A DNA stretch of 53,605 bases from Piromyces finnis finn (taxonomy: Eukaryota > Fungi > Neocallimastigomycota): positions 1 through 53,605 of the forward strand of contig MCFH01000106.1 of the NCBI GenBank assembly GCA_002104945.1, given 5' to 3'. The translations under genes and the position numbers were made by a program. Each line of letters opens with the position of its first letter. Within the stretch, counting starts at the first letter, position 1. The notes below the pieces were generated by a model. The model was not told where the DNA came from. It saw only the letters and a list, made by a program, of their open reading frames with translations, and ran no database searches. Below, piece by piece: positions 7,882 to 53,200 of this stretch.

Positions 7882-8247
7882 TGTAATGAGGTATATCTAA
7901 GGATAAGGGTTAGACTAGAAAATCATTAAGGTTAGATTAATGAAAATTTCATAATTATATTTTATAACCAATCATTAAATAATTAATTCACTTATCAAAT
8001 TGTATTAAAAAAAAAATAATTTTCATGTATAAAAGAGAGAATAAGAAAGATAAAATAGTTCTTTAGTGTTTTTATTAATAATTAATAAAAATTAGTTTTT
8101 TTTGTTTCGTCTTTAGTTTGATAATACACTGACCTAGCGAGTTAGTCGTATTATAATAATAAATTTAGTAAATAAACATTATTAAAAAAAATACATATAT
8201 TTGATACATTAGAGTGTGTGTGTTTATTATTATAATATTTCGTTACA
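7882..8247 (+). repeat. 5' LTR of element B
   Basis: 366 bp; differs from the 3' LTR by about 4 substitutions plus homopolymer lengths. Confidence 0.95.
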
Positions 8248-8258
8248 ATAAAAACACT
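8248..8258 (+). promoter_or_regulatory. Self-priming (Tf1-type) primer binding site of element B
   Basis: ATAAAAACACT directly after the LTR is the exact reverse complement of AGTGTTTTTAT at 8065-8075 inside the LTR; no tRNA-type TGG start. Confidence 0.75.
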
Positions 8259-8310
8259 CTAAGATCGCTACCTCAGTGCCTCGTTTATTTGCTTACTTCT
8301 AATTTTTTTT

Positions 8311-11300
8311 ATGGATAACTCTGCTGATTTGAAGAACGGTTTTGATGGCAACCGTCGCTACCTGAAGGGATTCTTAGCCAAAATGGACATGATCTTTATG
8401 ATCCATCCTGAAATAGGAAGGGACGATGGAGAAAAGGTCTTCTACGTCGTTAGTCGCCTCTACGGGGATGCAATGAATTGGGCTGCTACCTTGATTAACA
8501 ACCATGATCCTTGCTTACAGGATTATGGCGCCTTTGTTGGAAAGCTGAAGGCTGCTTTTGGTTTTCAGGATATGGTCTATACTGCCAACCAGAAGCTCAA
8601 GAAGATCAAACAACATGGCCTATCCAATACTCAAGAGTATATCAAGGAATTTAACTACTATGCTGATGAATCCACTTGGAATGAACAAGCCAAGATGGAT
8701 GCTTTTGTTGATGGGTTGGACGATAGAATCGCCACCCATATCCTTCAGATGTTTCCTGGCCCTTCTACCTTGATAAACTTACAAACAATAGCCAGTCGTA
8801 TAGGAAGTAGATTGGCATGCCACCAAGAGGAAATAAACAGAAGATCCAATAGAAGTTTCCGTTCTAAACAAAGCTTCCAATCCCGCTCCTCAGAAAGATC
8901 TACAAGTAAATCCACTCAGCCCAAGAAGGAAAATAATTTTGGCCCCATTTCAAGTGAAGAACGTAGCCGCCGAATGAAAGAGAATCTCTGCTTATATTGT
9001 GGTAAACCTGGTCACCGATTATCTGAATGCCCTATTAGAACCAAAAAGGAAAACCATACTAATAATGCTGGGGTCCATGTTTTGAATGAACAAGAAAAAT
9101 CCACTCGACTTTCGGATAACTCCTCTTTACCGCAAACTGTTATCGATGTTGATGTTGTTCTTCCATACAAATCTGTCGGAACTAAAGTTCTCTTAGATAG
9201 TGGTTCACAATTCTGTTTGATAGACCACGCCTTTGTTAAGGCCCATGAGATCCCTATAATTACCAAAGTAAAATGCCCACAAATTATAGGTATCGGAGGT
9301 CACCAAAAGATTATCGGCCAGACTTGGCCTATAACTGTGGAACACATGAATCACTCATGCCAGTTACAATTTTACGTCGTAAAATTGCCTTCTTACTGTT
9401 GTATTCTTGGCTCTGATTGGCTAGTCCTTCACAATCCGACAATCAATTTTGCTAGTAAGGACGTTTCCTATCATTCTGAATACTGTAAGGAAAATTGCTT
9501 AAGGAAAGAATCTGCTAGCTCTACCACTTCTGAACTCGAAGACCAATCGAAGGACGAAATGTCAGTTGGAAATACACCTGAATACCCTTTCAATGTATTC
9601 ACTTGTTTAGAAGAACCTGAAGTTGAGTCACCCCAAATTCCAATTCACTACTCTCAACACTCCAAAGTGTTCGAGGAAAGGCTCGCTGATAAACTCCCTC
9701 CTCATCGCCCGTACGACTGTGAGATCAACCTGAGACCAAATAGCAACTTGTTTTATGGTCCAATCTACCGACTTACTGAGAAAGAATCAAAGGTATTAGA
9801 AGAAACCATTAATGAAAATTTAAAAAAGGGGTTTATCCGCAAATCCAAATCGCCAGCTGGTGCTCCCGTTCTGTTTGTCCCGAAGAAGAGTGGAGAACTT
9901 CGTATGTGTATCGACTACCGCCGCTTGAACGAAATCACCATTAGGAACTCGTACCCTCTCCCATTGATCCAAGACATGTTGGATCATCTAGGAAAAGCTA
10001 AGGTGTTCTCGAAGTTAGATCTTCGATCCGCCTATAACTTGGTAAGAATCAAAGAAGGCGATGAATATAAGACCGCCTTCACCTGTCAATTTGGCCATTT
10101 CGAATATCTGGTAATGCCTTTCGGTCTCAAGAACGCTCCTGCAGTCTTCCAACATTTTATTAACGACGTTCTTGAAGGCATTATCGGTAAATTCGTCTTT
10201 TCGTATATTGACGATATTATCATTTTCTCTGATAATATAGCCGAACATCATGAACACGTCAATGAAGTCCTTCGTAGACTCGAAGAAGCCGGACTGTACG
10301 CTAAACTTGAAAAATGTCTATTCGACTCTCCTTGTCTTGACTTCCTTGGTCATAGAATCTCTGCCTCTGGTATCGGAATGGACCCTAATAAGGTGAAAGC
10401 CATTGCGGAATGGCCGACTCCTAAATCGGTCCATGAACTACAATCTTTCCTAGGCTTAGCCAACTATTATCGTAGATTTATTCCTGGCTTTGCTAAGATT
10501 GCTCACCCACTCCACCAACTTTGCAAGAAGAACACCGCCTTCGTTTGGAACGATACCGCTCAAGATGCTTTTGATGCTTTGGTTAAGCATTTTATTAGTC
10601 AGCCTATCCTTGCATATCCTGATGTTGACCTACCTTTCGTTGTCGAAACCGATGCAAGTAACTTCGCCATAGGTGCTGTATTGTCTCAAGTCAACAAGTC
10701 CGACAATATTCTTCACCCTGTTGCGTTCTTTTCTAGATCCCTTACAAATCCGGAGAAGAACTACCCTATCTATGATAAAGAACTTCTGGCTATCGTCGCG
10801 TCCTTAGAAGTGTGGAGACATTTTTTGAAAGGTGCGAATCATCCTTTCAAAATTATATCAGACCACAGAAACCTCCTTTTTCAGAAGAAACCGGAGAAGA
10901 TGACTCAGAGATTAATTAGATGGTCCCTTTTCCTTGCTGAATTCGATTTTGTCATTGAATATCGCCCTGGTTCCTCGAACGGGAAAACCGATGCCTTGTC
11001 AAGAAGACCTGACTATCTTGATCACTCTTGCAATTCCGATTCTAATAACTCTGTCTTTCGTCCCGAAAATTTCAGCTCCTGCTTTGCTTCATCCACTCCT
11101 TCTTCTCTTCTTGAAAAAATTGCTCTCTCTTGTAAACTTGACAAATTCTTCATTGAGACTTCTAATCAACTTCTCAATGATAATTGTTCTTCTGACTACA
11201 AACTTAGTAACAACGTCCTCCTTTTCCAAGATAAAATCTATGTTCCTAATGATTGCCGAGTGGAAATTCTGTCTTCTTGTCATGACTCCCCTGCTGCCGG

Positions 11301-12505
11301 CCATTTTGGTATTTCAAAAACTTTATCCTTGATTTCCCGTAACTACTGGTGGCCCAAAATGTATCAGGATGTTAAGGACTATGTCCGTTCTTGTGAGGTC
11401 TGCTGTCGTTCGAAATCCTCTAGACATAAACCTTACGGGTTATTATTCACTCTTCCTTTAGGTGAACGTCCCTGGTCTTCCATTGCTATGGATTTTATCA
11501 CTGACCTCCCCTCTTCTCGTGGATTTACCTGTATCTTCGTTGTCATTGATCGATTGACAAAAATGGCTCACTTTATCCCTTTTGAAAAAGTTCCCACTGC
11601 TGAACGTGCTGCCGAAGCTTTCATTAACAACGTCTTCAAACTTCATGGATGCCCTTCCGACATTGTTCTCGACCAAGGTTCTCAGTTCACTTCAAAGTTT
11701 TGGAAGAAATTCTTTGCTACCCTCAAGATTGATTTGAAATACTCTTCTGCTTATCACCACCAATCCAATGGCCAGACGGAGAGAGTGAACTCCGTTGTAG
11801 AACAATATCTACGCTGCTTCTCAAATTACAAAGGCACTAACTGGATCGAATACTTAAGCCTAGCTGAATTTAGTTACAATAATTCAGTTCAAGAATCTGC
11901 AAAACAAACACCCTTCTTCTTGAACTATGGTTTCCATCCTAATTTTAATCCAACAATTCCAACAACAAGTGAAGTTCCAAGAGCTGAAGAATACACAAAA
12001 GAATTAAAAGAAATTATCAGCACCCTCAAAAAAAACCTTTCGGAAGCTCAAAAGAAACAAGAACATTTCGCCAATAGACATAGACAACCAGGCCCGTCAT
12101 TCAAACCAGGAGAAAAGGTATGGTTAATCAATAATAATTTAGTTAAGGGAAATAAAAAATTCACCCCTCGGAAACTCGGTCCCTATGAAATTGAACAACA
12201 AATATCAGAAGTCTCATTCAAATTGAAACTCCCTGGTAACATGAAGATTGATCCGGTATTCCATAAATCATCTCTCGAGCCTTACTTCGAAGGGAAAAGT
12301 ACAAACCGAAAAGTTCAACCTCCACCACCTGTCATTATAAACGAAGAGGAGGAATACGAAGTAGAAGAAATTCTGGACAAAAGAAGACGCTATAACAAAA
12401 CTCAGTACTTGATCAAATGGAAAGGATATCCTATTTCAGAAGCCTCATGGGAACCCGAAGAAAATCTGAACTGTCCAGCAAAGCTAAGAGAATTCAACAA
12501 GACCC

Positions 12506-12510
<5 letters not shown>
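8311..12510 (+). CDS. Gag-Pol polyprotein, 1399 aa (gag, CCHC knuckle, protease, RT, RNase H, integrase, chromodomain)
   Basis: [14 protein letters not shown]; LLDSGS; YIDDIIIFS; VETDASN; [13 protein letters not shown]; DFIT/DQGSQF/TERVN; [20 protein letters not shown]. Confidence 0.97.
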
Positions 12511-12542
<32 letters not shown>

Positions 12543-12855
12543 AATAATAATAAAATTAACTAATTTTCATTAATTTTTAGACACAAATGAGGGAATATTA
12601 ATTTTTAGAATAAACTTAACCGATACCGTTTTGGCGAAGCTCCCATAGGGATTTACTGGACTTACAAGCGTACCAAGAACAAGTACTATCAAACGGCCAT
12701 ATTGGAACCTTGCCTATGAAACCTCTAGTACTTGTTGGACATACTTTAGTCTTGGCGCCAACCCGCCTTACATCAAAGTTACTCTACCAACCCCGACTTC
12801 GAACCCACAACCTTCTAGTTTATTGCCAACTACTCGACCATTGTACCACACCTTT
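12509..12855 (-). ncRNA. Putative antisense Pol III transcription unit in the 3' UTR of element B
   Basis: A box TGGTACAATGG (12848-12838) and B box GGTTCGAAGTC (12805-12795) at 44-nt spacing; structured body; T4 near 12552 and a ~32-nt T run at 12540-12509 on the minus strand. Expression is inferred, not shown. Confidence 0.5.
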
Positions 12856-12913
12856 TAATTCTCATATGAAGTCAACTGCCTATTTAAAAAAAAAAAAAAA
12901 ATTATTAGCTTAT

Positions 12914-12946
12914 AAATTCGTCTGGAATCCGAATTTAGAGGAGGAG
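12914..12946 (+). promoter_or_regulatory. Stem-loop plus polypurine tract of element B
   Basis: AAATTCG-TCTGGAATC-CGAATTT hairpin followed by AGAGGAGGAG, two bases before the 3' LTR. Confidence 0.75.
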
Positions 12947-12948
12947 CT

Positions 12949-13318
12949 TGTAATGAGGTATATCTAATGATAAGGGTTAGACTAGAAAATCATTAAGGTT
13001 AGATTAATGAAAATTTCATAATTATGTTTTTATAACCAATCATTAAGTAATTAATTCACTTATCAAATTGTATTAAAAAAAAAAATAATTTTCATGTATA
13101 AAAGAGAGAATAAGAAAGATAAAATAGTTCTTTAGTGTTTTTATTAATAATTAATAAAAATTAGTTTTTTTTGTTTCGTCTTTAGTTTGATAATACACTG
13201 ACCTAGCGAGTTAGTCGTATTATAATAATAAATTTAATAAATAAACATTATTAAAAAAAATACATATATATTTGATACATTAGAGTGTGTGTGTTTATTA
13301 TTATAATATTTCGTTACA
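12949..13318 (+). repeat. 3' LTR of element B
   Basis: Direct repeat of 7882-8247, followed by TSD CCGGA. Confidence 0.95.
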
Positions 13319-15254: not shown

Positions 15255-16014
15255 TTTTTTTTTTTTTTTTTTTTTTAACGGCATCAAATATTTTTAAACT
15301 TTATTATTAATTTAATTAAAATTATAATACATGTTATAAAAAATTAAAATAAAATAAAATAATAAAAAATATGTTTAAATAAACGCAAATGAATAAAAAT
15401 TGGGTATAATGTATTCTAGTAATTTTTAAATTAAAGTAAGAAAGCCACTATTATACTAAAGTATAATAATTGTATTTGACTTCCAATGGGACATGGGACA
15501 CCGAGTCAACGACCAAAATTTTGTCATTTGTCATGGGACAAAATTATGATCTCCATTGGTTGCGCTGGCCCTCCTGGCCTGTCTTACTGTTTCTTCAGCA
15601 TTGACGCTCTTGGATGTTGCTTCAAACCTTTTGAACATTGACCATTGCTGGCCAATAACAAAAGGCATGATTTTGGTTAGAAGTTCCGCTGTTACCGTCA
15701 AGAATGGTGTTTTTTCGCAAGTGCCCGATTGAGTCTGACTCTTGCAAAGTTCTTTCCATTCCCTTGAATTGCAATTGATATTGTTAAAACTTCTTCCCCC
15801 AAGAAGGAATTTAAATATTTTACTGCACACACTAGAATAATCATACACATTAATATTCACCTGATTATTAGAACTATTACTATTATTAACTAAATTACTA
15901 TATAAATTAGAATTATTATCTTCACTATTTCTATTACTACTATTATTACTACTATTGTTAAAATTATTATTATTATTATTATTGTCATTATTATTATTAT
16001 TATTATTATTATTG

Positions 16015-16070
<56 letters not shown>

Positions 16071-16071
16071 G

Positions 16072-16109
<38 letters not shown>

Positions 16110-16169
16110 GTCATTATTATTATTATTATTATTATTGCTATCTCTACTGATATCAACATCTTCATTATT
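15255..16169 (-). mobile_element. 3' end of a LINE (poly-Asn region, C-terminal ORF2 segment, 3' UTR, poly-A tail); inferred continuation of the LINE at 29310-34034
   Basis: Minus-strand frame open NNEDVDISRDS(N)n...IFKFLLGG...HNFVP* ending at 15531; poly-A at 15276-15255; joins in frame to ...NSDSPI at 34034. Confidence 0.6.
15960..16140. repeat. (AAT)n microsatellite with GACAAT interruptions (poly-Asn in the LINE frame)
   Basis: Directly visible tta/att trinucleotide array. Confidence 0.95.
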
Positions 16170-16468
16170 ATCTGAAGTGGCTAAATAAAAAATTCAATTT
16201 TCTTTCATAATTATTCTTTAAATTAATTAAAAATTACATAAAATGAATCCCGTGATAAAATACAATAAATATTTAATTTTTCGAATATTCGAACTTATTC
16301 TTTTTCGAATAAGTTCTATAAGTTTCTATAAGTCATAATTTAAATTGTTAAATAAATAATTTAAAATAAAATATAGATCAGGGTTTGAGTCAAACCCGAG
16401 TGATCTAGATTGATGTCTTAAATACTAACCATTAAGAAAATATTAATTTTCTAATAGATTCTGGTACA
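16170..16468 (-). mobile_element. 5' half of an LTR (element C family) with an A/B-box module
   Basis: Colinear with 44599-44885; A box 16439-16429, B box GTTTGACTC 16395-16387. Confidence 0.85.
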
Positions 16469-25273: not shown

Positions 25274-25770
25274 TGTAAAAGGTTTATTATATATTAGTAA
25301 ATAAGTTAATGTTAAATAATAAGTTAAATAAGTTAGTTATCAAATCTCTATACGAGTTAATAATTAATTAAAATTTTATAAAAAATAATAAAAGAACTAA
25401 AATAATTGTTATAATACAAAAATAAATATAAATAAATATATATTAATATGAAATATTACCTACTTAAATAATTAATTTTTATTATTATCTTTTATTTATT
25501 AATTATAACTATCTACATTAATTATTATTATAGTTATTAATTTACTTTAATACTAACGCTAAAGTATTTAACGTTAGTTTATACTATACTATTTAACTAT
25601 AATAGTTTATTTACTAAATCACTTGATTGGGTGAAGTAAATAACCTTTCTATTTAATTAATAACCATTAATATATGGTTATGCATATTTCTGGTAATAAA
25701 TGTTAACCAGAATATATGGTTTCATTTGAAATATTTGTGGGCAAACTTATGGCCACAAATATTTCTTACA
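25274..25770 (-). mobile_element. LTR of the TGTAAGAAATATTTGTGG family (no TSD)
   Basis: Reverse complement of 42150-42646 and 41652-42145. Confidence 0.85.
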
Positions 25771-29309: not shown

Positions 29310-32300
29310 CCCTTAGGGAACGGGCCTTCATTTATTTTAATAAATGAGGTTTCTCAAGCAGCTCTACTTATGCTCATAGTACTGAGCGAGTAGAAAAAAT
29401 AATAAATAAATCTAATCATTGCTCAATGGATGCTTGGTTAGTCTTTATTGGTAAAAATGTAAGGACTAAGCTCATGATACTGAGCGAATTAACACTTTTC
29501 CATCGAGTATTAGTTTATTAGATGGATAAGTTGAATGTTTGATATTCAGTTAAGTTTGTTTAGCATTTAATTAGAAGAGTAATACATTATTGTTGCTTAA
29601 TTTTTTCTTTTAATTCATGTAGGTACTACTCTTGTAAGAATTCAATGTAGTCAACTTTAGCATTTGCATTGTATTTTTATATTCATGTAACTATTGTTGA
29701 ATTGTTTCCTGTAAGAGATTGATTCACTCTACATCATGTAAAAATACTATTAACAATCTTTCTAGTGTCGACATTCAATTCCGATTTAAAGTTTTACCAA
29801 TTTAAATATTTATGAAAAGTAAAGTCAAATAATTTTTAGTGTCAAAAAGCGAATCGAATTTACTAACAACAAACCAAAACTAGAATTTACAAAGAAAAAT
29901 TACAACTTCAAATTCAAAAAAAGAAATTATAATCAAAGCATTGAAACAATTTTTTGTACTATCCAGTACTTTTTTAAGAAGAAAGATACAGTTTTTTTTC
30001 CCATTATATTTATAATTATTTATTAGTTCTTATTTTATATTCAATTTATTTTTTAATTAGAATTAATTATCATGTCCGTCCTTTATATCAAAGATAAGAA
30101 TTATATCAGACGTGGTACCCGCTCTTATGGTATCCCCTTAGATAATATTAGATCCTTCTTTATCCGTGGTATTCGATCATGGTCAGTTAGCAAACTATGG
30201 GAAAAACTCGAGGTTATTCTGAAGGACAATTTTAATTCAGTTATTAGTGTTAAATATTTGAAGAATTTCAATGATCACTTTTTCTTAGTCAAGGTTCATG
30301 GTTCAATGAAAGACTGTTATAATATTTTACACATCTTAAGGAAGAAACTTTCAACTGCCAAAATTTCCTTTTCAGCTCGTAGTAGAAGGAATCACAAATA
30401 CACTTTTTCTTCACTCAAACGTAAATTTTTAGTTTCCAATAAACAACAACAAACAATTCAACAATCAACTCAACAATCATCTCAACAATCATCTCAACAA
30501 TCTCATCAACATTCAGATCTTCAACAAGATCTCCAACATGAATATACTCCAGATCTACAACAATCACAATTTCAACCTCATCATTCAACAATTAATTCTG
30601 ATAGTTCTATTAACTCCGATAACAATTCAGTAGTTGATAGTTCATCAATTACACCGCCATCTGATAATAGGTCATCTAATTCCTCTGACACATCATCCAT
30701 TAATAACGATGACAATAATAATAATAATAGTTATAGCAATGATTCTTGCTCATCCAACAAGCCCGATAATTTTTCTTTCTGTCTTAGTTGGAATACCAAT
30801 GGGTGGAATCATGAGAAGAGAGATAGCATTAGCTATTTCACAGCTATTTTTAAACCATTATTTTTATGCTTTCAAGAAACTGGGAATGGTTCTGGATCGA
30901 ATACAGAGTATCCTTGTCGTGTTACTTTACGAAATTATAGACACTTTTTCAAGAAAGCTGATGAATCAGTTCCTGGAATGAGAGGTTTATATTTAGGTAT
31001 TCACAATTCGTGTCAAGCCTCACTTGAAAACTTCTTAGGTAAGTATATTATCTCTATTTATACTTTTAGCCTTTGGAATAGATTCAAATGCTCGATTGGG
31101 AATGTTTATATGCCTCATAGTCATCACAACATCTATGTTGATCATGCAAAGTTAGAAGTTCGCTTGTGGTTACAAACTCACTCATCTCATCCATCGATTC
31201 TTGTTGGTGATTTTAATATGTCCAAAGTAAAATTATCCAACTGGTTATCATCTAATGGATTAGGAGATTGGGAAGTTCTTCCACTCAAAGGTTCTTCTAT
31301 CTCTTGGACTCGGGGTGATCAATCTTCCGACATTGATCACGCTCTTATCAACTCGAAGATGAAAGATCTTATTCACTCAGGATCATTCATAAATGATTTT
31401 TATCCTGTTTCAGATCATAAGCCACTCCTTATTAATGGTAAAGTTATTCCTATGGATGATTTTTCTAATGACTTTAGTGTTATTAAGAAAATTCTGAAAT
31501 GGAATAGATTAAAATGTATTGAGGAAAAGAAATCTATTCTCAGTCACAATAAATTCCAAATACTTTCAGCAAAACTCAACGATTCTAATTTTTCGACAGA
31601 TGAACTCTCCAAAGAGTTTACTTCAACTGCTTTTTCAATTGCAGACGAGTTCAGTATTACTTCTGTAAATAATATTATAAAATCGTCATTTCATATTTCA
31701 CAACAAATTTTTAATCTTCAGAAAATCAAAATGAAGCTGTATAGGAAATTTAAAAAAGAAAGAATTTATGATATAGATGAATTGATTAAAAGGATTGAAA
31801 TTTATCATAAGCTCATTAACTACATTCATAAAAAATGTAATGAGTACAGGAAACAAGAATATCTTCATTGGATTAAACCAGGTTGTGAGTATATGAAGAG
31901 TCATAATCCTAAGAAAGCTTGGAAATGGATCAAGAAAACAGCGAAAATCGGAAAAGATACTTTCTTTACTGCTCAACCTATTAAAAATAAAAATGGAGAT
32001 TTAGTTGTTGCTACGGAAGAACAACTAGAGGTATGGCATGATCATTTCGAAAATCTTGCATCTGATCCAAGTGGTGCAAGTCTTGACTTGGAGCAATGGT
32101 ATGAAGAACCAACGAATAAGCGTTTTTCACTCCCTATGCTTGAAGAATGGGATATCAATCAAGATATTAGTATTGATGAAGTCAAGTCAGCTATCCTCTC
32201 TACTCCTAATTATAAAGCATCAGGACCGGATGGTATTCCTATTGAATTTTTCAAAGCATTAATTCCTTCAAGTAATGATTCTAATAATGCTACTGATAAT

Positions 32301-41651: not shown

Positions 41652-42145
41652 TGTAAGAAATATTTGTGGCCATAAGTTTGCCCACAAATATTTCAATTGA
41701 AACCATATATTCTGGTCACCATTTATTGGCCAGATATATATAACCATATATTAATGGTTATTAATTAAATAGGAAGTTTATTTCCTTTACCCAATCAAGT
41801 GGTAAAGAAAATAAACTAATATAGTTAAATAGTGTAATTAAAACTAACGTTAAATACTTTAGCGTTAGTATTAAAGTAAATTAATAGCTATAATAATAAT
41901 TAATGTATTATAATTATAATAAATAAATAAAAGATATAATTAAAATATAATTATTTAAGTAAAAGTTATTTCATAAAATATTTATATAAGTGTTTATATT
42001 TATTTTAGTGTTATAATATTTATTTTCTTTCTTTTATTATTTTTTATAAAACTTTATTTAGTTATTAACTCGTATAGAGAGGTAATAACTAACTTAATTA
42101 ACTAATTAGTAACTTATTAACTAATAATATAAAAAACCTTTTACA
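41652..42145 (+). mobile_element. Solo LTR (later insertion), TSD GATTT
   Basis: TGTAAG...TTTACA; GATTT at 41647-41651 and 42146-42150. The TSD includes the first base of the neighbouring LTR. Confidence 0.88.
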
Positions 42146-42149
42146 GATT

Positions 42150-42646
42150 TGTAAGAAATATTTGTGGCCATAAGTTTGCCCACAAATATTTCAATTGAAA
42201 CCATATATTCTGGTTAACATTTATTGGCCAGAAATATGCATAACCATATATTAATGGTTATTAAATAAATACAAAGTTTATTTACTTCACCCAATCAAGT
42301 GGTCTAGTAAATAAACTATTATAGTTAAATAGTATAGTCTAAACTAACGTTAAATACTTTAGCGTTAGTATTAAAGTAAATTAATAGCTATAATAATAAT
42401 TAATGTATATAATTATAACTAATAAATAAAAGATAATAATTATAAATAATTATTTAAGTAAATAATATTTCATATTAATATTTATTTGTTTTATATTTAT
42501 TTTTGTGTTATAATATTTATTTTAGTTCTTTTATTATTTTTTATAAAACTTTATTTAGTTATTAACTCGTATAGAGAGGTAATAACTAACTTAATTAACT
42601 TGTTATATTTAACCTATTAACTAATATATAATAAAAACCTTTTACA
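42150..42646 (+). mobile_element. Solo LTR (earlier insertion), same family, TSD TGATT
   Basis: TGTAAG...TTTACA; TGATT at 41646-41650 and 42647-42651. Confidence 0.88.
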
Positions 42647-50272: not shown

Positions 50273-53200
50273 CCTCTTGGGAATGTATCTTCATTTATAC
50301 CCTCTTGGGAACGTGCCTTCATTTATTTAATAAATGTAGTTTCTCAAGGGGGTCTACTCATGCTCATGGTACTGAGAGAGTAGAAAGAATTAAATCCAAG
50401 TATTGCGCAATGGATGCTTGGTGCCCTCTTGGGAACGTGCCTTCATTTATTTAATAAATGTAGTTTCTCTAGGGGGTCTATTCATGCTCATGGTACTGAG
50501 AGAGTAGAAAGAATTAAATCCAAGTATTGCGCAATGGATGCTTGGTTAGTCTTAAGGGAAAATTATTAGGACTAAGCTCATGGTACTGAGCGATTAAAAA
50601 ACATTTTATTCATCGAATTTAAGTATTTGATGAATAAGTTGAATGTTTGATATTCAGGTAAGTTTGTATAGTATTTAATTAGAAGAGTAATACATTTTGT
50701 TGCTGTATTTTTTCTTTTATTCATGTATTCTTGTAGTACTACTCTTCTCTTGTAAGAATCCAATGTAGTCAACTTTAGCATTTGCGTTGTATTTTTATAT
50801 TCATGTAGCTATTGTTGTATTGTTTCTTGTAAGAGACTGATTCACTCTACATCATGTAAAAATACTATTCACAAGCTTTCTGGTGTCGATATTCTTGATT
50901 CAAATTTTTACCAATTTAAATATTTAATGAAAAGTAAAGTCAAACAAGTTTAGTGTCAAAAAGTGAATCAAATTTACTAACAACAAACCAAAACTAGAAT
51001 TTTTAAAGAAAATTTACAACTAGAATTCAAAAAAGAAACTTTAAACAAAGCATCGTAACAATTTTTGTACTATCCAGTACTTTTAAGAAGAGAGAGAGAG
51101 ACAGATTTTTTTCCATATACGTTATATTTATAATTTTTATTAGTATTTATTTTATATTCAATATTTTTTAATTAGAATTTATTATCATGTCAGTCCTTTA
51201 TATTAAAGATAAGAATTATATCAGACGTGGTACCCGGTCTTATGGTATCCCCTTAGATGATATTCGCTCCTTCTTTATCCGTGGTATTCGTTCATGGTCA
51301 GTAAATATGCTATGGGAAAAACTCGAGGTTATTCTAGAAGATAAATTTAATTCAGTTATTAGTGTTAAATATTTTCAAACTTTCAATGATCACTTTTTCT
51401 TAGTCAAGGTTCATGGTTCATCGAAAGATTGTATTAAAATCTTACACATGTTAAAGAAGAAACTTTCAGTTACCTCAATTTCCTTTTCAGCTCGTAGTAG
51501 AAGGAATCACAAATACACTTTTTCCACACTCAAACGTAAAATTTTAGTTTCTAATAAACATCAACATTCTATTCAACATTCTATTCAACAATCAGTTCAA
51601 CAATCTCATCAACAATCCGATCTTCAACAAGATCTTCAACAAGATCTTCAACAAGTTTCCCATCATGAAAATATTCCAGATCTACAGCTAACACAATTTC
51701 AATCTCAACATTCAACAATTAATTCTATTAGTTCTATCAACTCAAATAACAGTTCAATAGTTGATAGTTCTTCAGCTTCACAGCCATCTAGTAATAGTTC
51801 TACTTATTCCTCTGATGCATCATCCATTAGTAACGATGACTTTAATAATAATAATAATAGCAACGATTCTTCCTCATCCAACAAGCCTGATAACTTTTCT
51901 TTTTGTCTTAGTTGGAACACCAATGGGTGGAATCACGAAAAGAGAGATAGTATTAGCTATTTCACAGCTATTTTCAAACCATTATTTTTATGTTTCCAAG
52001 AAACTGGTAATGGTTCTGGTTCGAATACAGATTATCCTTGTCGTGTTACTTTGCGAAACTATAGACACTTTTTCAAGAAAGCTGATGAATCAGTTCCTGG
52101 AATGAGAGGTTTATATTTAGGTTTTCACAATTCGTGTCAAGCCTCACTTGAAAACTTCTCTGGAAAGTATATTATTTCTATTTATACTTTTAGTCTCTGG
52201 AATAGATTCAAATGCTCGATTGGAAATGTTTATATGCCTCATAGTCATCACAACATCTATGTTGATCATGCAAAGTTAGAAGTTCGCTTGTGGTTACAAA
52301 CTCATTCATCCCATCCATCGATTCTTGTTGGTGATTTTAATATGTCTAAAGTAAAATTATCCAACTGGTTATCAACTAATGGATTAGGAGATTGGGAAAT
52401 TCTTCCGCTTAGAGGGTCTACTATCTCTTGGACTCGAGGTGATCAATCTTCCGACATTGACCATGCTCTTATCAATTCGAAGATGAAAGATCTTATTCAC
52501 TCAGGATCATTTATAAATAATTTTTATCCTGTATCAGACCATAAGCCACTTCTTATTAATGGTAAAATTATTCCTATGGAAGATTTTTCTAATGACTTTA
52601 ATATTCTTAAGAAAATTCTGAAATGGAATAGATTAAAATGTATTGAGGAAAAGGAATCTATTATCAGTCATAATAAATTCCAAATACTTTCAGCAAAATT
52701 CAACGATCCTAATGTTTCAACAGATGAACTTTCCAAAGAGTTTACTTCAACTGCTTTTTCAATTGCAGACGAGCTCAGTATTACCTCAGCAAATAATGTT
52801 ATAAAGTCTTCATTTCATATTTCACAACAAATTTTTAATCTTCAAAAAATCAAAATGAAGTTGTATAAGAGATTTAAAAAAGAAAGAATTTATGATATAG
52901 ATGAATTTATTAAACGAATTAAAATCTACCGTAAGCTCATTGATTACATCCACAAAAGATGTAATGAATTTAGGAAGCAAGAATATCTTCATTGGATTAA
53001 AACAGGATGTGAGTATATGAAGAGTCATAATCCTAAGAAGGCCTGGAAATGGATCAAGAAAACTGCAAAAATTGGAAAAGATTCTTTCTTTATTGCTCAA
53101 CCAATTAAAAATAAAAATGGAGAATTAGTTGTTGCTACAGAAGAACAACTAGAAGTGTGGCATGATCATTTCGAAAACCTTGCATCAGATCCAAGTGGTG

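What the first reader, a model, noticed from the sequence alone, without database searches (positions are those of the whole stretch)
12509..12855. Antisense Pol III-type transcription unit hidden between the pol stop and the PPT of the intact element B
Seen on the minus strand: GGTG-TGGTACAATGG-TCGAGTAGTTGGCAATAAACTAGAAGGTTGTG-GGTTCGAAGTC, a tRNA-like head with A/B boxes 44 nt apart and an anticodon-arm-like hairpin TAGTT-7nt-AACTA, but no acceptor stem. A GC-richer ~230-nt body follows, with a perfect 11-bp helix (AACAAGTACTA/TAGTACTTGTT) and TTGGCG/CGCCAA pairing, then T runs; the 32-nt A tract right after the pol stop is a T run on this strand. Element B is the one whose LTR lacks an A/B module. 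Inference: an element-encoded ~300-340-nt Pol III RNA or TFIIIC site, acquired independently, possibly an antisense regulator, scaffold or insulator. The polarity (T run, not A tail, at its 3' end) argues against a simple SINE insertion.
Basis: partly seen in the sequence, partly recalled or inferred. Interest (0 to 1): 0.78.

Follow-up and report, generated by a model that had tools for sequence, protein, structure and literature searches.

The report
Passenger segment with tRNA-promoter-like boxes
A young family of jumping genes in an anaerobic gut fungus carries a 345-base foreign, non-coding passenger between its last gene and its end repeat; the reverse strand of this passenger starts with the two promoter boxes of a tRNA-type gene, but nothing I could test shows that the cell uses them.

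Summary
The sequence features are real. On the minus strand there is an A box at 12848-12838, a B box at 12805-12795 (start to start 43 nt), a 5-bp hairpin, an 11-bp perfect inverted repeat and a 32-nt A tract after the pol stop.

The segment 12541-12885 is a discrete, GC-richer unit in the 3' spacer of a Ty3/gypsy chromovirus (family B).
- It is present in 27 copies in the genome, always in this context, and never free-standing.
- Two family-B copies lack it exactly, with one A tract in its place. A tree places both inside the module-bearing radiation, so these are secondary deletions between the two flanking A tracts.
- Sister families have the A tracts but not the module. The "T-run terminator" is therefore inherited spacer, not part of the unit.

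ARAGORN (even relaxed) and the Rfam tRNA model see no tRNA. Neither strand folds better than shuffles. The head is the most variable part of the module. None of the 27 copies carries a tRNA-seeking LTR insertion, although real tRNA genes and the LTR-borne tRNA mimics of sister families often do.

Best reading: an old tRNA-type (SINE-like) relic riding as a passenger. An active antisense Pol III/TFIIIC site remains possible (about 0.2). The scan had already found the LTR-borne mimics in this genome, but not this module.

The parts
7882..13318 (+). Element B: full-length Ty3/gypsy chromovirus. The LTRs are at 7882-8248 and 12949-13318 and the 5-bp target duplication is CCGGA.
   Evidence: LTR pair and flanks read. 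The two LTRs are about 97.8% alike.
8311..12510 (+). Single gag-pol ORF of 1399 aa: gag, protease, RT, RNase H, integrase, SH3_Tf2-1, and a chromodomain ending 2 residues before the stop.
   Evidence: ORF list; Pfam scan.
12509..12540 (+). First A tract (A32 here, 19-74 in other copies). It overlaps the TAA stop and reads as a T run on the minus strand.
   Evidence: Sister families have comparable A tracts in the same spacer.
12541..12885 (-). The module: 345 nt between the two A tracts. It has an AT-rich part (12541-12616) and a GC-richer core (about 12617-12855, roughly 42% GC).
   Evidence: Present in 27 family-B copies. Exactly absent from C135 and C200. Composition. No homolog elsewhere.
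12795..12855 (-). tRNA-promoter-like head: A box 12848-12838, hairpin 12832-12816, B box 12805-12795.
   Evidence: Not recognised as tRNA.
12678..12736 (.). 11-bp perfect inverted repeat AACAAGTACTA / TAGTACTTGTT with a 37-nt loop.
   Evidence: It was reached by 4 of 500 shuffles.
12886..12901 (+). Second A tract (A16 here, 14-45 in other copies). It is the right-hand repeat of the deletion that removes the module.
12916..12947 (+). Conserved pre-PPT hairpin ATTCG-TCTGGAATC-CGAAT (12916-12934) and polypurine tract AGAGGAGGAGC (12937-12947).
   Evidence: Conserved across families B, A, 64% and 65%.

Best explanation
The 345-nt segment is foreign, non-coding cargo. It entered the 3' untranslated spacer of the family-B chromovirus, between the pol stop and the pre-PPT hairpin, before the family diversified. 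Since then it has been copied passively with every retrotransposition.

Its GC-richer core begins, on the minus strand, with a decayed tRNA-type internal promoter (A box, B box, remnants of a D arm and an anticodon-like hairpin). The most likely source is a tRNA-derived Pol III gene or a SINE-like retroposon that landed in antisense orientation in a master copy.

The two A tracts around it are ordinary features of this spacer in related families. They slip in length at each cycle and occasionally recombine, which deletes the module cleanly.

Shown: the discreteness, the fixation in the family, the secondary losses, the absence of free copies, and the motif content. Inferred: the tRNA/SINE origin and the passenger status. 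The boxes may still bind TFIIIC, but I think a role for the element is less likely than none.
For: - Fixed in the family: 25 near-identical copies plus three diverged ones (94%, 92% and 85-89% identity), all between pol and the 3' LTR.
- Foreign: sister families A, 64% and 65% have the A tracts, the pre-PPT hairpin and the PPT, but no such segment. GC is about 0.40-0.43, against 0.12-0.27 in the surrounding spacer and LTR.
- Losses are secondary: the copies at C135 and C200 have one A tract in place of A-tract, module, A-tract. On a pol tree both sit inside the star radiation, with the module-bearing copy L026 as outgroup. C200 is identical in pol to 10 module-bearing copies. C135 has its own 5-bp target duplication.
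- The motif pair is better than chance: 0.017 per element; reversed control 0 in 56 Mb.
- Precedent in the same genome: an abundant tRNA-headed SINE has inserted into a family-B copy.
- Precedent elsewhere: LTR elements that acquired Pol III promoter pieces, proposed to arise by SINE insertion (PMC10886601).
- Nothing points to use: and no insertion near the head in any copy.
Against: - The head is not recognisably a tRNA. ARAGORN finds nothing down to 60% of its thresholds, whereas the real SINE head and the family-A mimic appear at 70%. Rfam gives no tRNA hit at E<=10.
- I found no similarity to any tRNA that I could collect, so a tRNA origin is inferred from the boxes and their spacing only.
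- There is no poly(A) tail, no clear target duplication and no free-standing relative, so the SINE route is not demonstrated.
- The module has survived at least 15% sequence divergence in a spacer where a clean deletion is easy. That could mean it is kept for a reason.
- Sister families carry tRNA mimics that the cell very probably treats as Pol III genes, which raises the prior for a function here.
Confidence: 0.55

Rival explanations
1. One reading: the module is a working antisense Pol III transcription unit, or at least a TFIIIC binding site, that serves the element. Possible roles are a chromatin barrier or positioning signal, or an antisense regulatory RNA of about 300-320 nt ending in the T run. 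It may functionally replace the LTR-borne tRNA mimic that sister families carry.
For: - The A and B boxes lie within the natural range of this genome's tRNAs and at canonical spacing.
- A long T run follows on the same strand.
- Both boxes are still present in the diverged copies L026 and L027.
- Sister families carry sense tRNA mimics at the LTR start that attract tRNA-seeking LTR elements: at least 25 such junctions and two hits in this window. Family B alone lacks that mimic.
- The module has persisted through at least 15% divergence.
Against: - No insertion of any kind near the predicted start (about 12868) in 27 copies. The same LTR family sits 11-12 nt before 6 of 30 tRNA-Arg genes and near 10 of 30, and in front of roughly a tenth of the LTR mimics. 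At that tenth, about 2.7 hits would be expected here; the chance of seeing none is about 0.06.
- The head is the most polymorphic part of the module: pi 0.011, against 0.0004 in the body and 0.0019 in pol.
- In L026 three of the 22 box positions are changed, more than the module average.
- The T run is inherited spacer, not a dedicated terminator.
- Neither strand has excess structure.
- A module-less copy integrated normally.
Confidence: 0.2
2. The boxes are a chance resemblance inside a captured segment of unrelated origin, for example a fragment of a host or other mobile-element transcript picked up by template switching at the A tracts during reverse transcription. On this reading the plus strand is the original sense strand.
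For: - All tRNA detectors are negative.
- There is no T stem and no acceptor stem.
- With tolerant definitions such box pairs are expected about 0.025 times per window, i.e. some tens per genome, and the finding was chosen after reading many windows.
- The plus strand has an open frame of about 89 codons and an A tract at its 3' side, as a captured polyadenylated RNA would.
- A tracts on both sides offer microhomology for template switches.
Against: - The box pair lies at the very edge of the GC-rich core, where a tRNA-type head would be. The chance of such a pair falling inside a 345-nt segment is about 0.001-0.002 (scaled).
- The strict pattern has no match for its reversed control in 56 Mb.
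- The open frame has no relative in the genome or in Pfam and is broken in the diverged copies.
Confidence: 0.2
3. The module acts on the plus strand, as a structured element of the genomic RNA's 3' untranslated region (export, packaging or stability). The 11-bp helix would be its core, and the antisense boxes would be irrelevant.
For: - The 11-bp perfect inverted repeat is unlikely by chance (4 of 500 shuffles).
- The body is the least variable part among the young copies.
- The position corresponds to where some retroviruses keep RNA transport elements (my own knowledge).
Against: - The plus-strand fold is no better than shuffles (z = -0.04).
- There are no covarying changes to test, because the copies are too alike.
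- Sister families do without it.
- A module-less copy integrated with a normal target duplication.
Confidence: 0.05

Closest known systems
TRIMp3 elements: Cassandra (5S), Helenus (tRNA-like), Ajax (5S) - LTR retrotransposons that carry Pol III promoter-derived sequence (PMC10886601)
   Same: An LTR retroelement carries a small-RNA-gene-derived piece that keeps the internal promoter boxes but no functional RNA. The proposed origin is a SINE insertion into the element.
   Different: In those elements the piece lies in the LTR, in sense orientation, and the elements are short and non-autonomous, presumably transcribed from that promoter. Here the piece is internal (between pol and the PPT) and antisense, in a 5.4-kb autonomous chromovirus, and it is far more decayed.
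LTR-borne tRNA mimics of the sister chromovirus families in this same genome (family A at window 35931-35820 and 41651-41560; the 64% family in L087)
   Same: Same host and same clade of elements. There is an A box and a B box about 43 nt apart near the 3' end of the element, with no cloverleaf by default ARAGORN.
   Different: The mimics are in sense orientation at the first bases of U3 and are followed at once by a T8 run. They are homologous to each other (z = 11.8) and are repeatedly hit by tRNA-seeking LTR elements. The family-B head is antisense and upstream of the PPT, shows no detectable similarity to them, has no nearby terminator and has no such hits.
tRNA-derived SINEs, e.g. the 533-bp SINE of this genome (L012:828-1398)
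   Same: A tRNA-promoter-like head at one end of a unit of a few hundred bases, and the ability to sit inside family-B elements.
   Different: The real SINE has hundreds of dispersed copies (at least 873 candidates), a poly(A) tail and 12-bp target duplications. The module has no free copy, no poly(A) tail on its own strand and no clear duplication.
Cargo captured between the last gene and the PPT of retroviruses and LTR retrotransposons (transduced host sequence; my own knowledge)
   Same: The same tolerant position in the 3' untranslated region. The cargo is propagated with the element, is dispensable and can be lost.
   Different: No source gene was found and the module does not code for anything recognisable.
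Extra-TFIIIC (ETC) and chromosome-organising-clamp sites of yeasts: B-box sites that bind TFIIIC without Pol III transcription (my own knowledge)
   Same: A good B-box core (GGTTCGAA) outside a tRNA gene. This is the minimal way in which the module could matter.
   Different: Those sites are defined by factor occupancy, which is untested here. They are host loci, not retroelement cargo.

Membership tests
tRNA gene or pseudogene | Cloverleaf secondary structure recognised by a tRNA finder | tested here: not met
   ARAGORN finds nothing in the window. It finds nothing on the head even at 60-70% of its thresholds. The SINE head and the family-A mimic do appear at 70%.
tRNA gene or pseudogene | Match to the Rfam tRNA covariance model (RF00005) | tested here: not met
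   No match at gathering score. No match at E<=10 in a 481-nt search. The same model finds the genome's real tRNAs at 62-70 bits.
tRNA gene or pseudogene | A box and B box at canonical spacing | tested here: met
   TGGTACAATGG and GGTTCGAAGTC, 43 nt start to start.
tRNA-derived SINE | Dispersed free-standing copies flanked by target duplications | tested here: not met
   All 28 DNA matches, 27 head matches and 30 translated matches lie inside family-B elements.
tRNA-derived SINE | 3' tail (poly(A) or simple repeat) on the strand of the head | tested here: inconclusive
   The minus strand ends in an AT-rich stretch...TTTTATTATTATTAG, and then the inherited T run. There is no poly(A) tail, unlike the genome's real SINE.
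tRNA-derived SINE | Promoter head at the 5' end of the unit | tested here: met
   The GC-rich core starts 4-7 nt before the A box. The deletion endpoints lie 30 nt further out but are set by the A tracts.
TRIMp3 / Helenus-like LTR element | Pol III promoter-derived sequence inside the LTR, in sense orientation, in a short non-autonomous element | tested here: not met
   The head is internal and antisense, and the element is a 5.4-kb autonomous chromovirus. The family-B LTR has no A/B pair.
Active Pol III transcription unit | Internal promoter plus T-run terminator on the same strand | tested here: met
   The boxes are as above. The first run of 5 or more T lies about 255 nt after the B box (12540-12509). 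That run is the complement of an A tract shared with sister families.
Active Pol III transcription unit | Occupancy by the Pol III machinery, read indirectly from landings of tRNA-seeking retroelements | tested here: not met
   0 of 27 copies have any insertion near the head. The positive controls work: real tRNA-Arg genes and the LTR mimics. This is a weak negative because the copies are young.
Active Pol III transcription unit | A transcript of the predicted strand and size; TFIIIC or Pol III binding | not testable with these tools
   No expression or ChIP data can be reached from here.
Ty3/gypsy chromovirus (the carrier element) | gag, protease, RT, RNase H and integrase in that order, with a C-terminal chromodomain; LTRs TG..CA; 5-bp target duplication; PPT | tested here: met
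   Pfam scan. LTRs, duplication and PPT. The nearest named relative is an Orpinomyces protein at 56% identity.

The most novel reading that the evidence does not exclude
The module is a second, independently acquired way for these fungal chromoviruses to carry a Pol III/TFIIIC signal. It would be an antisense, internal tRNA-type promoter that binds TFIIIC (and perhaps drives an RNA of about 300 nt across the element's 3' untranslated region). In family B it would take the place of the LTR-borne tRNA mimic that sister families carry and that the cell very probably treats as a Pol III gene.
Probability: 0.18. Interest if true: 0.7.

Novelty: new variant of a known kind. Interest (0 to 1): 0.33.

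Why it matters
If the boxes are inert, this is an ordinary case of a retroelement carrying an old nested insertion. It is useful mainly as a clean example of how homopolymer tracts let such cargo be lost again.

If they are bound or transcribed, autonomous chromoviruses of anaerobic gut fungi would have acquired Pol III signals at least twice, in different places and orientations. That would strengthen the idea that recruiting the Pol III machinery is advantageous for these elements, and it would give a natural with/without pair (the C135 and C200 copies lack the module) for testing what the signal does.

The report also supplies an internal yardstick for such claims in this genome: where tRNA-seeking LTR elements land.

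Tried and rejected
- tRNA, tmRNA and any Rfam family, including SRP RNA, RNase P and 5S: no match.
- Relaxed ARAGORN: nothing on the head.
- Bipartite primer-binding site (a plus-strand stretch complementary to a primer tRNA, as in Ty3). I rejected this because the element has no tRNA-type PBS and instead shows Tf1-like self-complementarity.
- Coding cargo. An open frame of about 89 codons on the plus strand has no Pfam family and no relative in the genome beyond the element's own copies, and it is broken in diverged copies.
- Fragment of another element or of the same element: no similarity in 488 kb of loci in hand.
- Homology to the LTR mimics, the SINE head or five available tRNAs: none beyond the boxes. 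This test is insensitive, and I could collect only five distinct tRNA sequences.
- 'Empty site proves insertion'. I rejected this after the tree showed that the two empty copies are derived.
- Cross-species test:
  - The metagenome scan gave relatives of at most 46% identity, with no A/B pair in 340 kb.
  - The protein search gave relatives of at most 60% identity.
- Selection on the boxes: too few differences among the copies to decide.

Full report
**Setting.** The window is contig 9 of a 56.5-Mb, 232-contig, very AT-rich assembly.
- The nearest named relative of the element's protein is an Orpinomyces protein at 56% identity.
- The size and contig number match my memory of the Piromyces finnis assembly, and an earlier unchecked note of this scan names that species. 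I treat the host as an anaerobic gut fungus, probably P. finnis.

**The carrier element.** Element B (7882-13318) is a full-length Ty3/gypsy chromovirus.
- Its 367-370-bp LTRs run TG..CA and the 5-bp target duplication is CCGGA.
- One gag-pol ORF (8311-12510) carries gag, protease, RT, RNase H, integrase, SH3_Tf2-1 and a terminal chromodomain.
- A conserved hairpin and a polypurine tract lie just before the 3' LTR.

On the minus strand I read the following.
- TGGTACAATGG at 12848-12838.
- GGTTCGAAGTC at 12805-12795, 43 nt start to start.
- A 3-bp D-arm-like stem.
- A 5-bp hairpin with a 7-nt loop, shifted about 3 nt from where an anticodon arm should be.
- No T stem and no acceptor stem.

Further features:
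- The 11-bp inverted repeat (12678-12688 / 12726-12736) is real and unusual: 4 of 500 shuffles reach it.
- A32 follows the stop codon.

**What the segment is.**
- A search of the whole genome finds 28 matches to the segment and 27 to the head alone. All lie between the pol 3' end and the 3' LTR of family-B elements. None is free-standing.
- 25 copies are 99-100% identical. Three are diverged: L026 at 94%, L027 at 92%, and L028 at 85-89% and truncated.
- Two further family-B copies, at C135 and C200, lack exactly the stretch between the two A tracts and have a single A tract instead.
- On a tree of the pol 3' region both sit inside the star-like radiation of module-bearing copies. C200 is identical to ten of them, and the module-bearing L026 is the outgroup.
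- The module is therefore ancestral to the family as sampled, and the two empty copies are independent secondary deletions between the A tracts.
- The C135 copy has its own 5-bp target duplication.
- Both A tracts vary widely in length among copies, 19-74 and 14-45, as expected from slippage.

**Sister families.** They show what is inherited and what is foreign.
- Family A (in this window, 62% identical integrase), a 64% family and a 65% family all have AT-rich spacers with long A tracts, the same pre-PPT hairpin and a PPT. None has a GC-richer insert.
- The foreign core is about 12617-12855 by composition. It starts on the minus strand 4-7 nt before the A box.
- The deletion endpoints are set by the A tracts and do not define the original insertion.

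**Is the head tRNA-like beyond the boxes?** Not measurably.
- ARAGORN finds nothing even at 60-70% of its thresholds. The genome's real SINE head and the family-A mimic appear at 70%.
- Rfam gives nothing at gathering score, and no tRNA hit at E<=10 in a 481-nt search.
- The head shows no significant similarity to the LTR mimics, the SINE head or the five tRNAs I could collect.

**Is the box pair chance?**
- A tolerant definition gives 0.025 expected per window and 0.017 per element. That is tens per genome.
- Scaled to a 345-nt foreign segment the expectation is about 0.001-0.002.
- A stricter pattern hits only tRNAs, LTR mimics and this head in 56 Mb, with no match for its reversed control.
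- Eighty distant chromovirus loci from metagenomes (340 kb) contain no such pair.
- I conclude that a tRNA-type origin is more likely than chance, but it is not proven.

**Is it used?** I built an indirect occupancy test.
- A roughly 495-bp TG..CA LTR, present twice at 41652-42646, ends 11-12 nt before the mature 5' end of tRNA-Arg(TCT) in 6 of 30 tRNA loci and lies near 10 of 30.
- The same LTR sits about 21 nt before the A box of the family-A mimic in this window.
- At least 25 further such junctions exist in the genome, against at least 232 candidate family-A LTR starts.
- Earlier notes of the scan reached the same view of the LTR mimics.
- In front of the family-B head, none of the 27 copies has any insertion. 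At the mimic's rough rate of one in ten, about 2.7 would be expected, and the chance of none is about 0.06. This is a weak negative.

**Other checks for use.**
- Neither strand folds better than shuffles: z = +0.19 for the minus strand and -0.04 for the plus strand.
- Among the 25 young copies the head is the most variable part: pi 0.011, against 0.0004 in the body, 0.0019 in pol and 0.0066 in the LTR. The counts are tiny.
- In L026 three of the 22 box positions differ. In L027 none does.

**Origin.**
- The genome has a very young, abundant tRNA-headed SINE of 533 bp plus poly(A), with at least 873 candidates. One copy lies inside a family-B pol with a 12-bp target duplication. SINEs therefore do land in these elements.
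- The module lacks the hallmarks of that route: it has no tail, no duplication and no free relatives.
- An 89-codon open frame on the plus strand has no relatives and no Pfam family.
- No similarity to anything else in hand was found.
- Capture by template switching at the A tracts remains possible.
- Published precedent exists for LTR elements carrying Pol III promoter relics, proposed to arise by SINE insertion: Cassandra, Helenus and Ajax (PMC10886601). There the relic is in the LTR, in sense orientation, in short non-autonomous elements.

**Limits.**
- No relative closer than 60% protein identity was found outside this genome.
- Expression and factor binding cannot be tested here.

**Verdict.**
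- Real feature, correctly described.
- Most likely an old antisense tRNA-type relic carried as a passenger (0.55).
- An active Pol III/TFIIIC module (0.2) and a chance resemblance in unrelated cargo (0.2) remain open.

Noticed in passing
L012:828-1398 (G000 contig 185): A 533-bp tRNA-headed SINE with an A36 tail and a 12-bp target duplication (TCCTATTTCAGA) is inserted in the chromodomain region of a family-B copy. The family has at least 873 candidates in the genome, and the top 40 are 100% identical, so it is very young and abundant.
   Followed up: partly
window 41652-42146, 42150-42646 and 25274-25770; L056, L061, L072, L073, L080, L084: A roughly 495-bp TG..CA LTR family behaves like Ty3. 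It ends 11-12 nt before tRNA-Arg(TCT) genes and about 21 nt before the A box of the family-A LTR mimic. At least 25 further LTR-mimic junctions exist in the genome.
   Followed up: partly
window 35931-35820 and 41651-41560 (minus strand); L087:538-640; L172, L173: Several LTR families start with a sense tRNA-type A/B-box mimic, which in family A is followed by a T8 run. The family-A and 64%-family mimics are homologous to each other. The scan has already reported these mimics in other windows.
   Followed up: partly
window 12916-12934; also 35965-35947 (minus strand), L086:510-530, L087:506-526: A stem-loop ATTCG-TCTGGWATC-CGAAT lies just before the polypurine tract and is conserved in four chromovirus families. 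Other readers of this genome have already noted it.
   Followed up: no
window 8208-8216 and 8255-8263: Family B has no TGG-type primer-binding site. A 9-nt stretch near the LTR end (TTAGAGTGT) is complementary to the bases just after the LTR (ACACTCTAA), as in Tf1-type self-priming.
   Followed up: no
window 12974-12983 and 12997-13005 (and the same places in the 5' LTR): The family-B LTR holds two GGTTAGA motifs, which are B-box-like with C changed to A. They may be the wreck of the LTR mimic that sister families keep.
   Followed up: no
L058, L060, L062, L066: tRNA-Glu(TTC) ends about 10 nt before tRNA-Arg(TCT). This is a tandem tRNA pair that could be co-transcribed.
   Followed up: no
window 15837-16190: A dense array of 9-, 12- and 15-nt-spaced repeats (20 overlapping 153-nt copies), probably a coding low-complexity repeat.
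   Followed up: no
window 29310-31018 and 50300-52142: Two blocks about 21.1 kb apart share 80-93% identity over about 1.7 kb. This is either a large duplication or the LTRs of a very long element.
   Followed up: no
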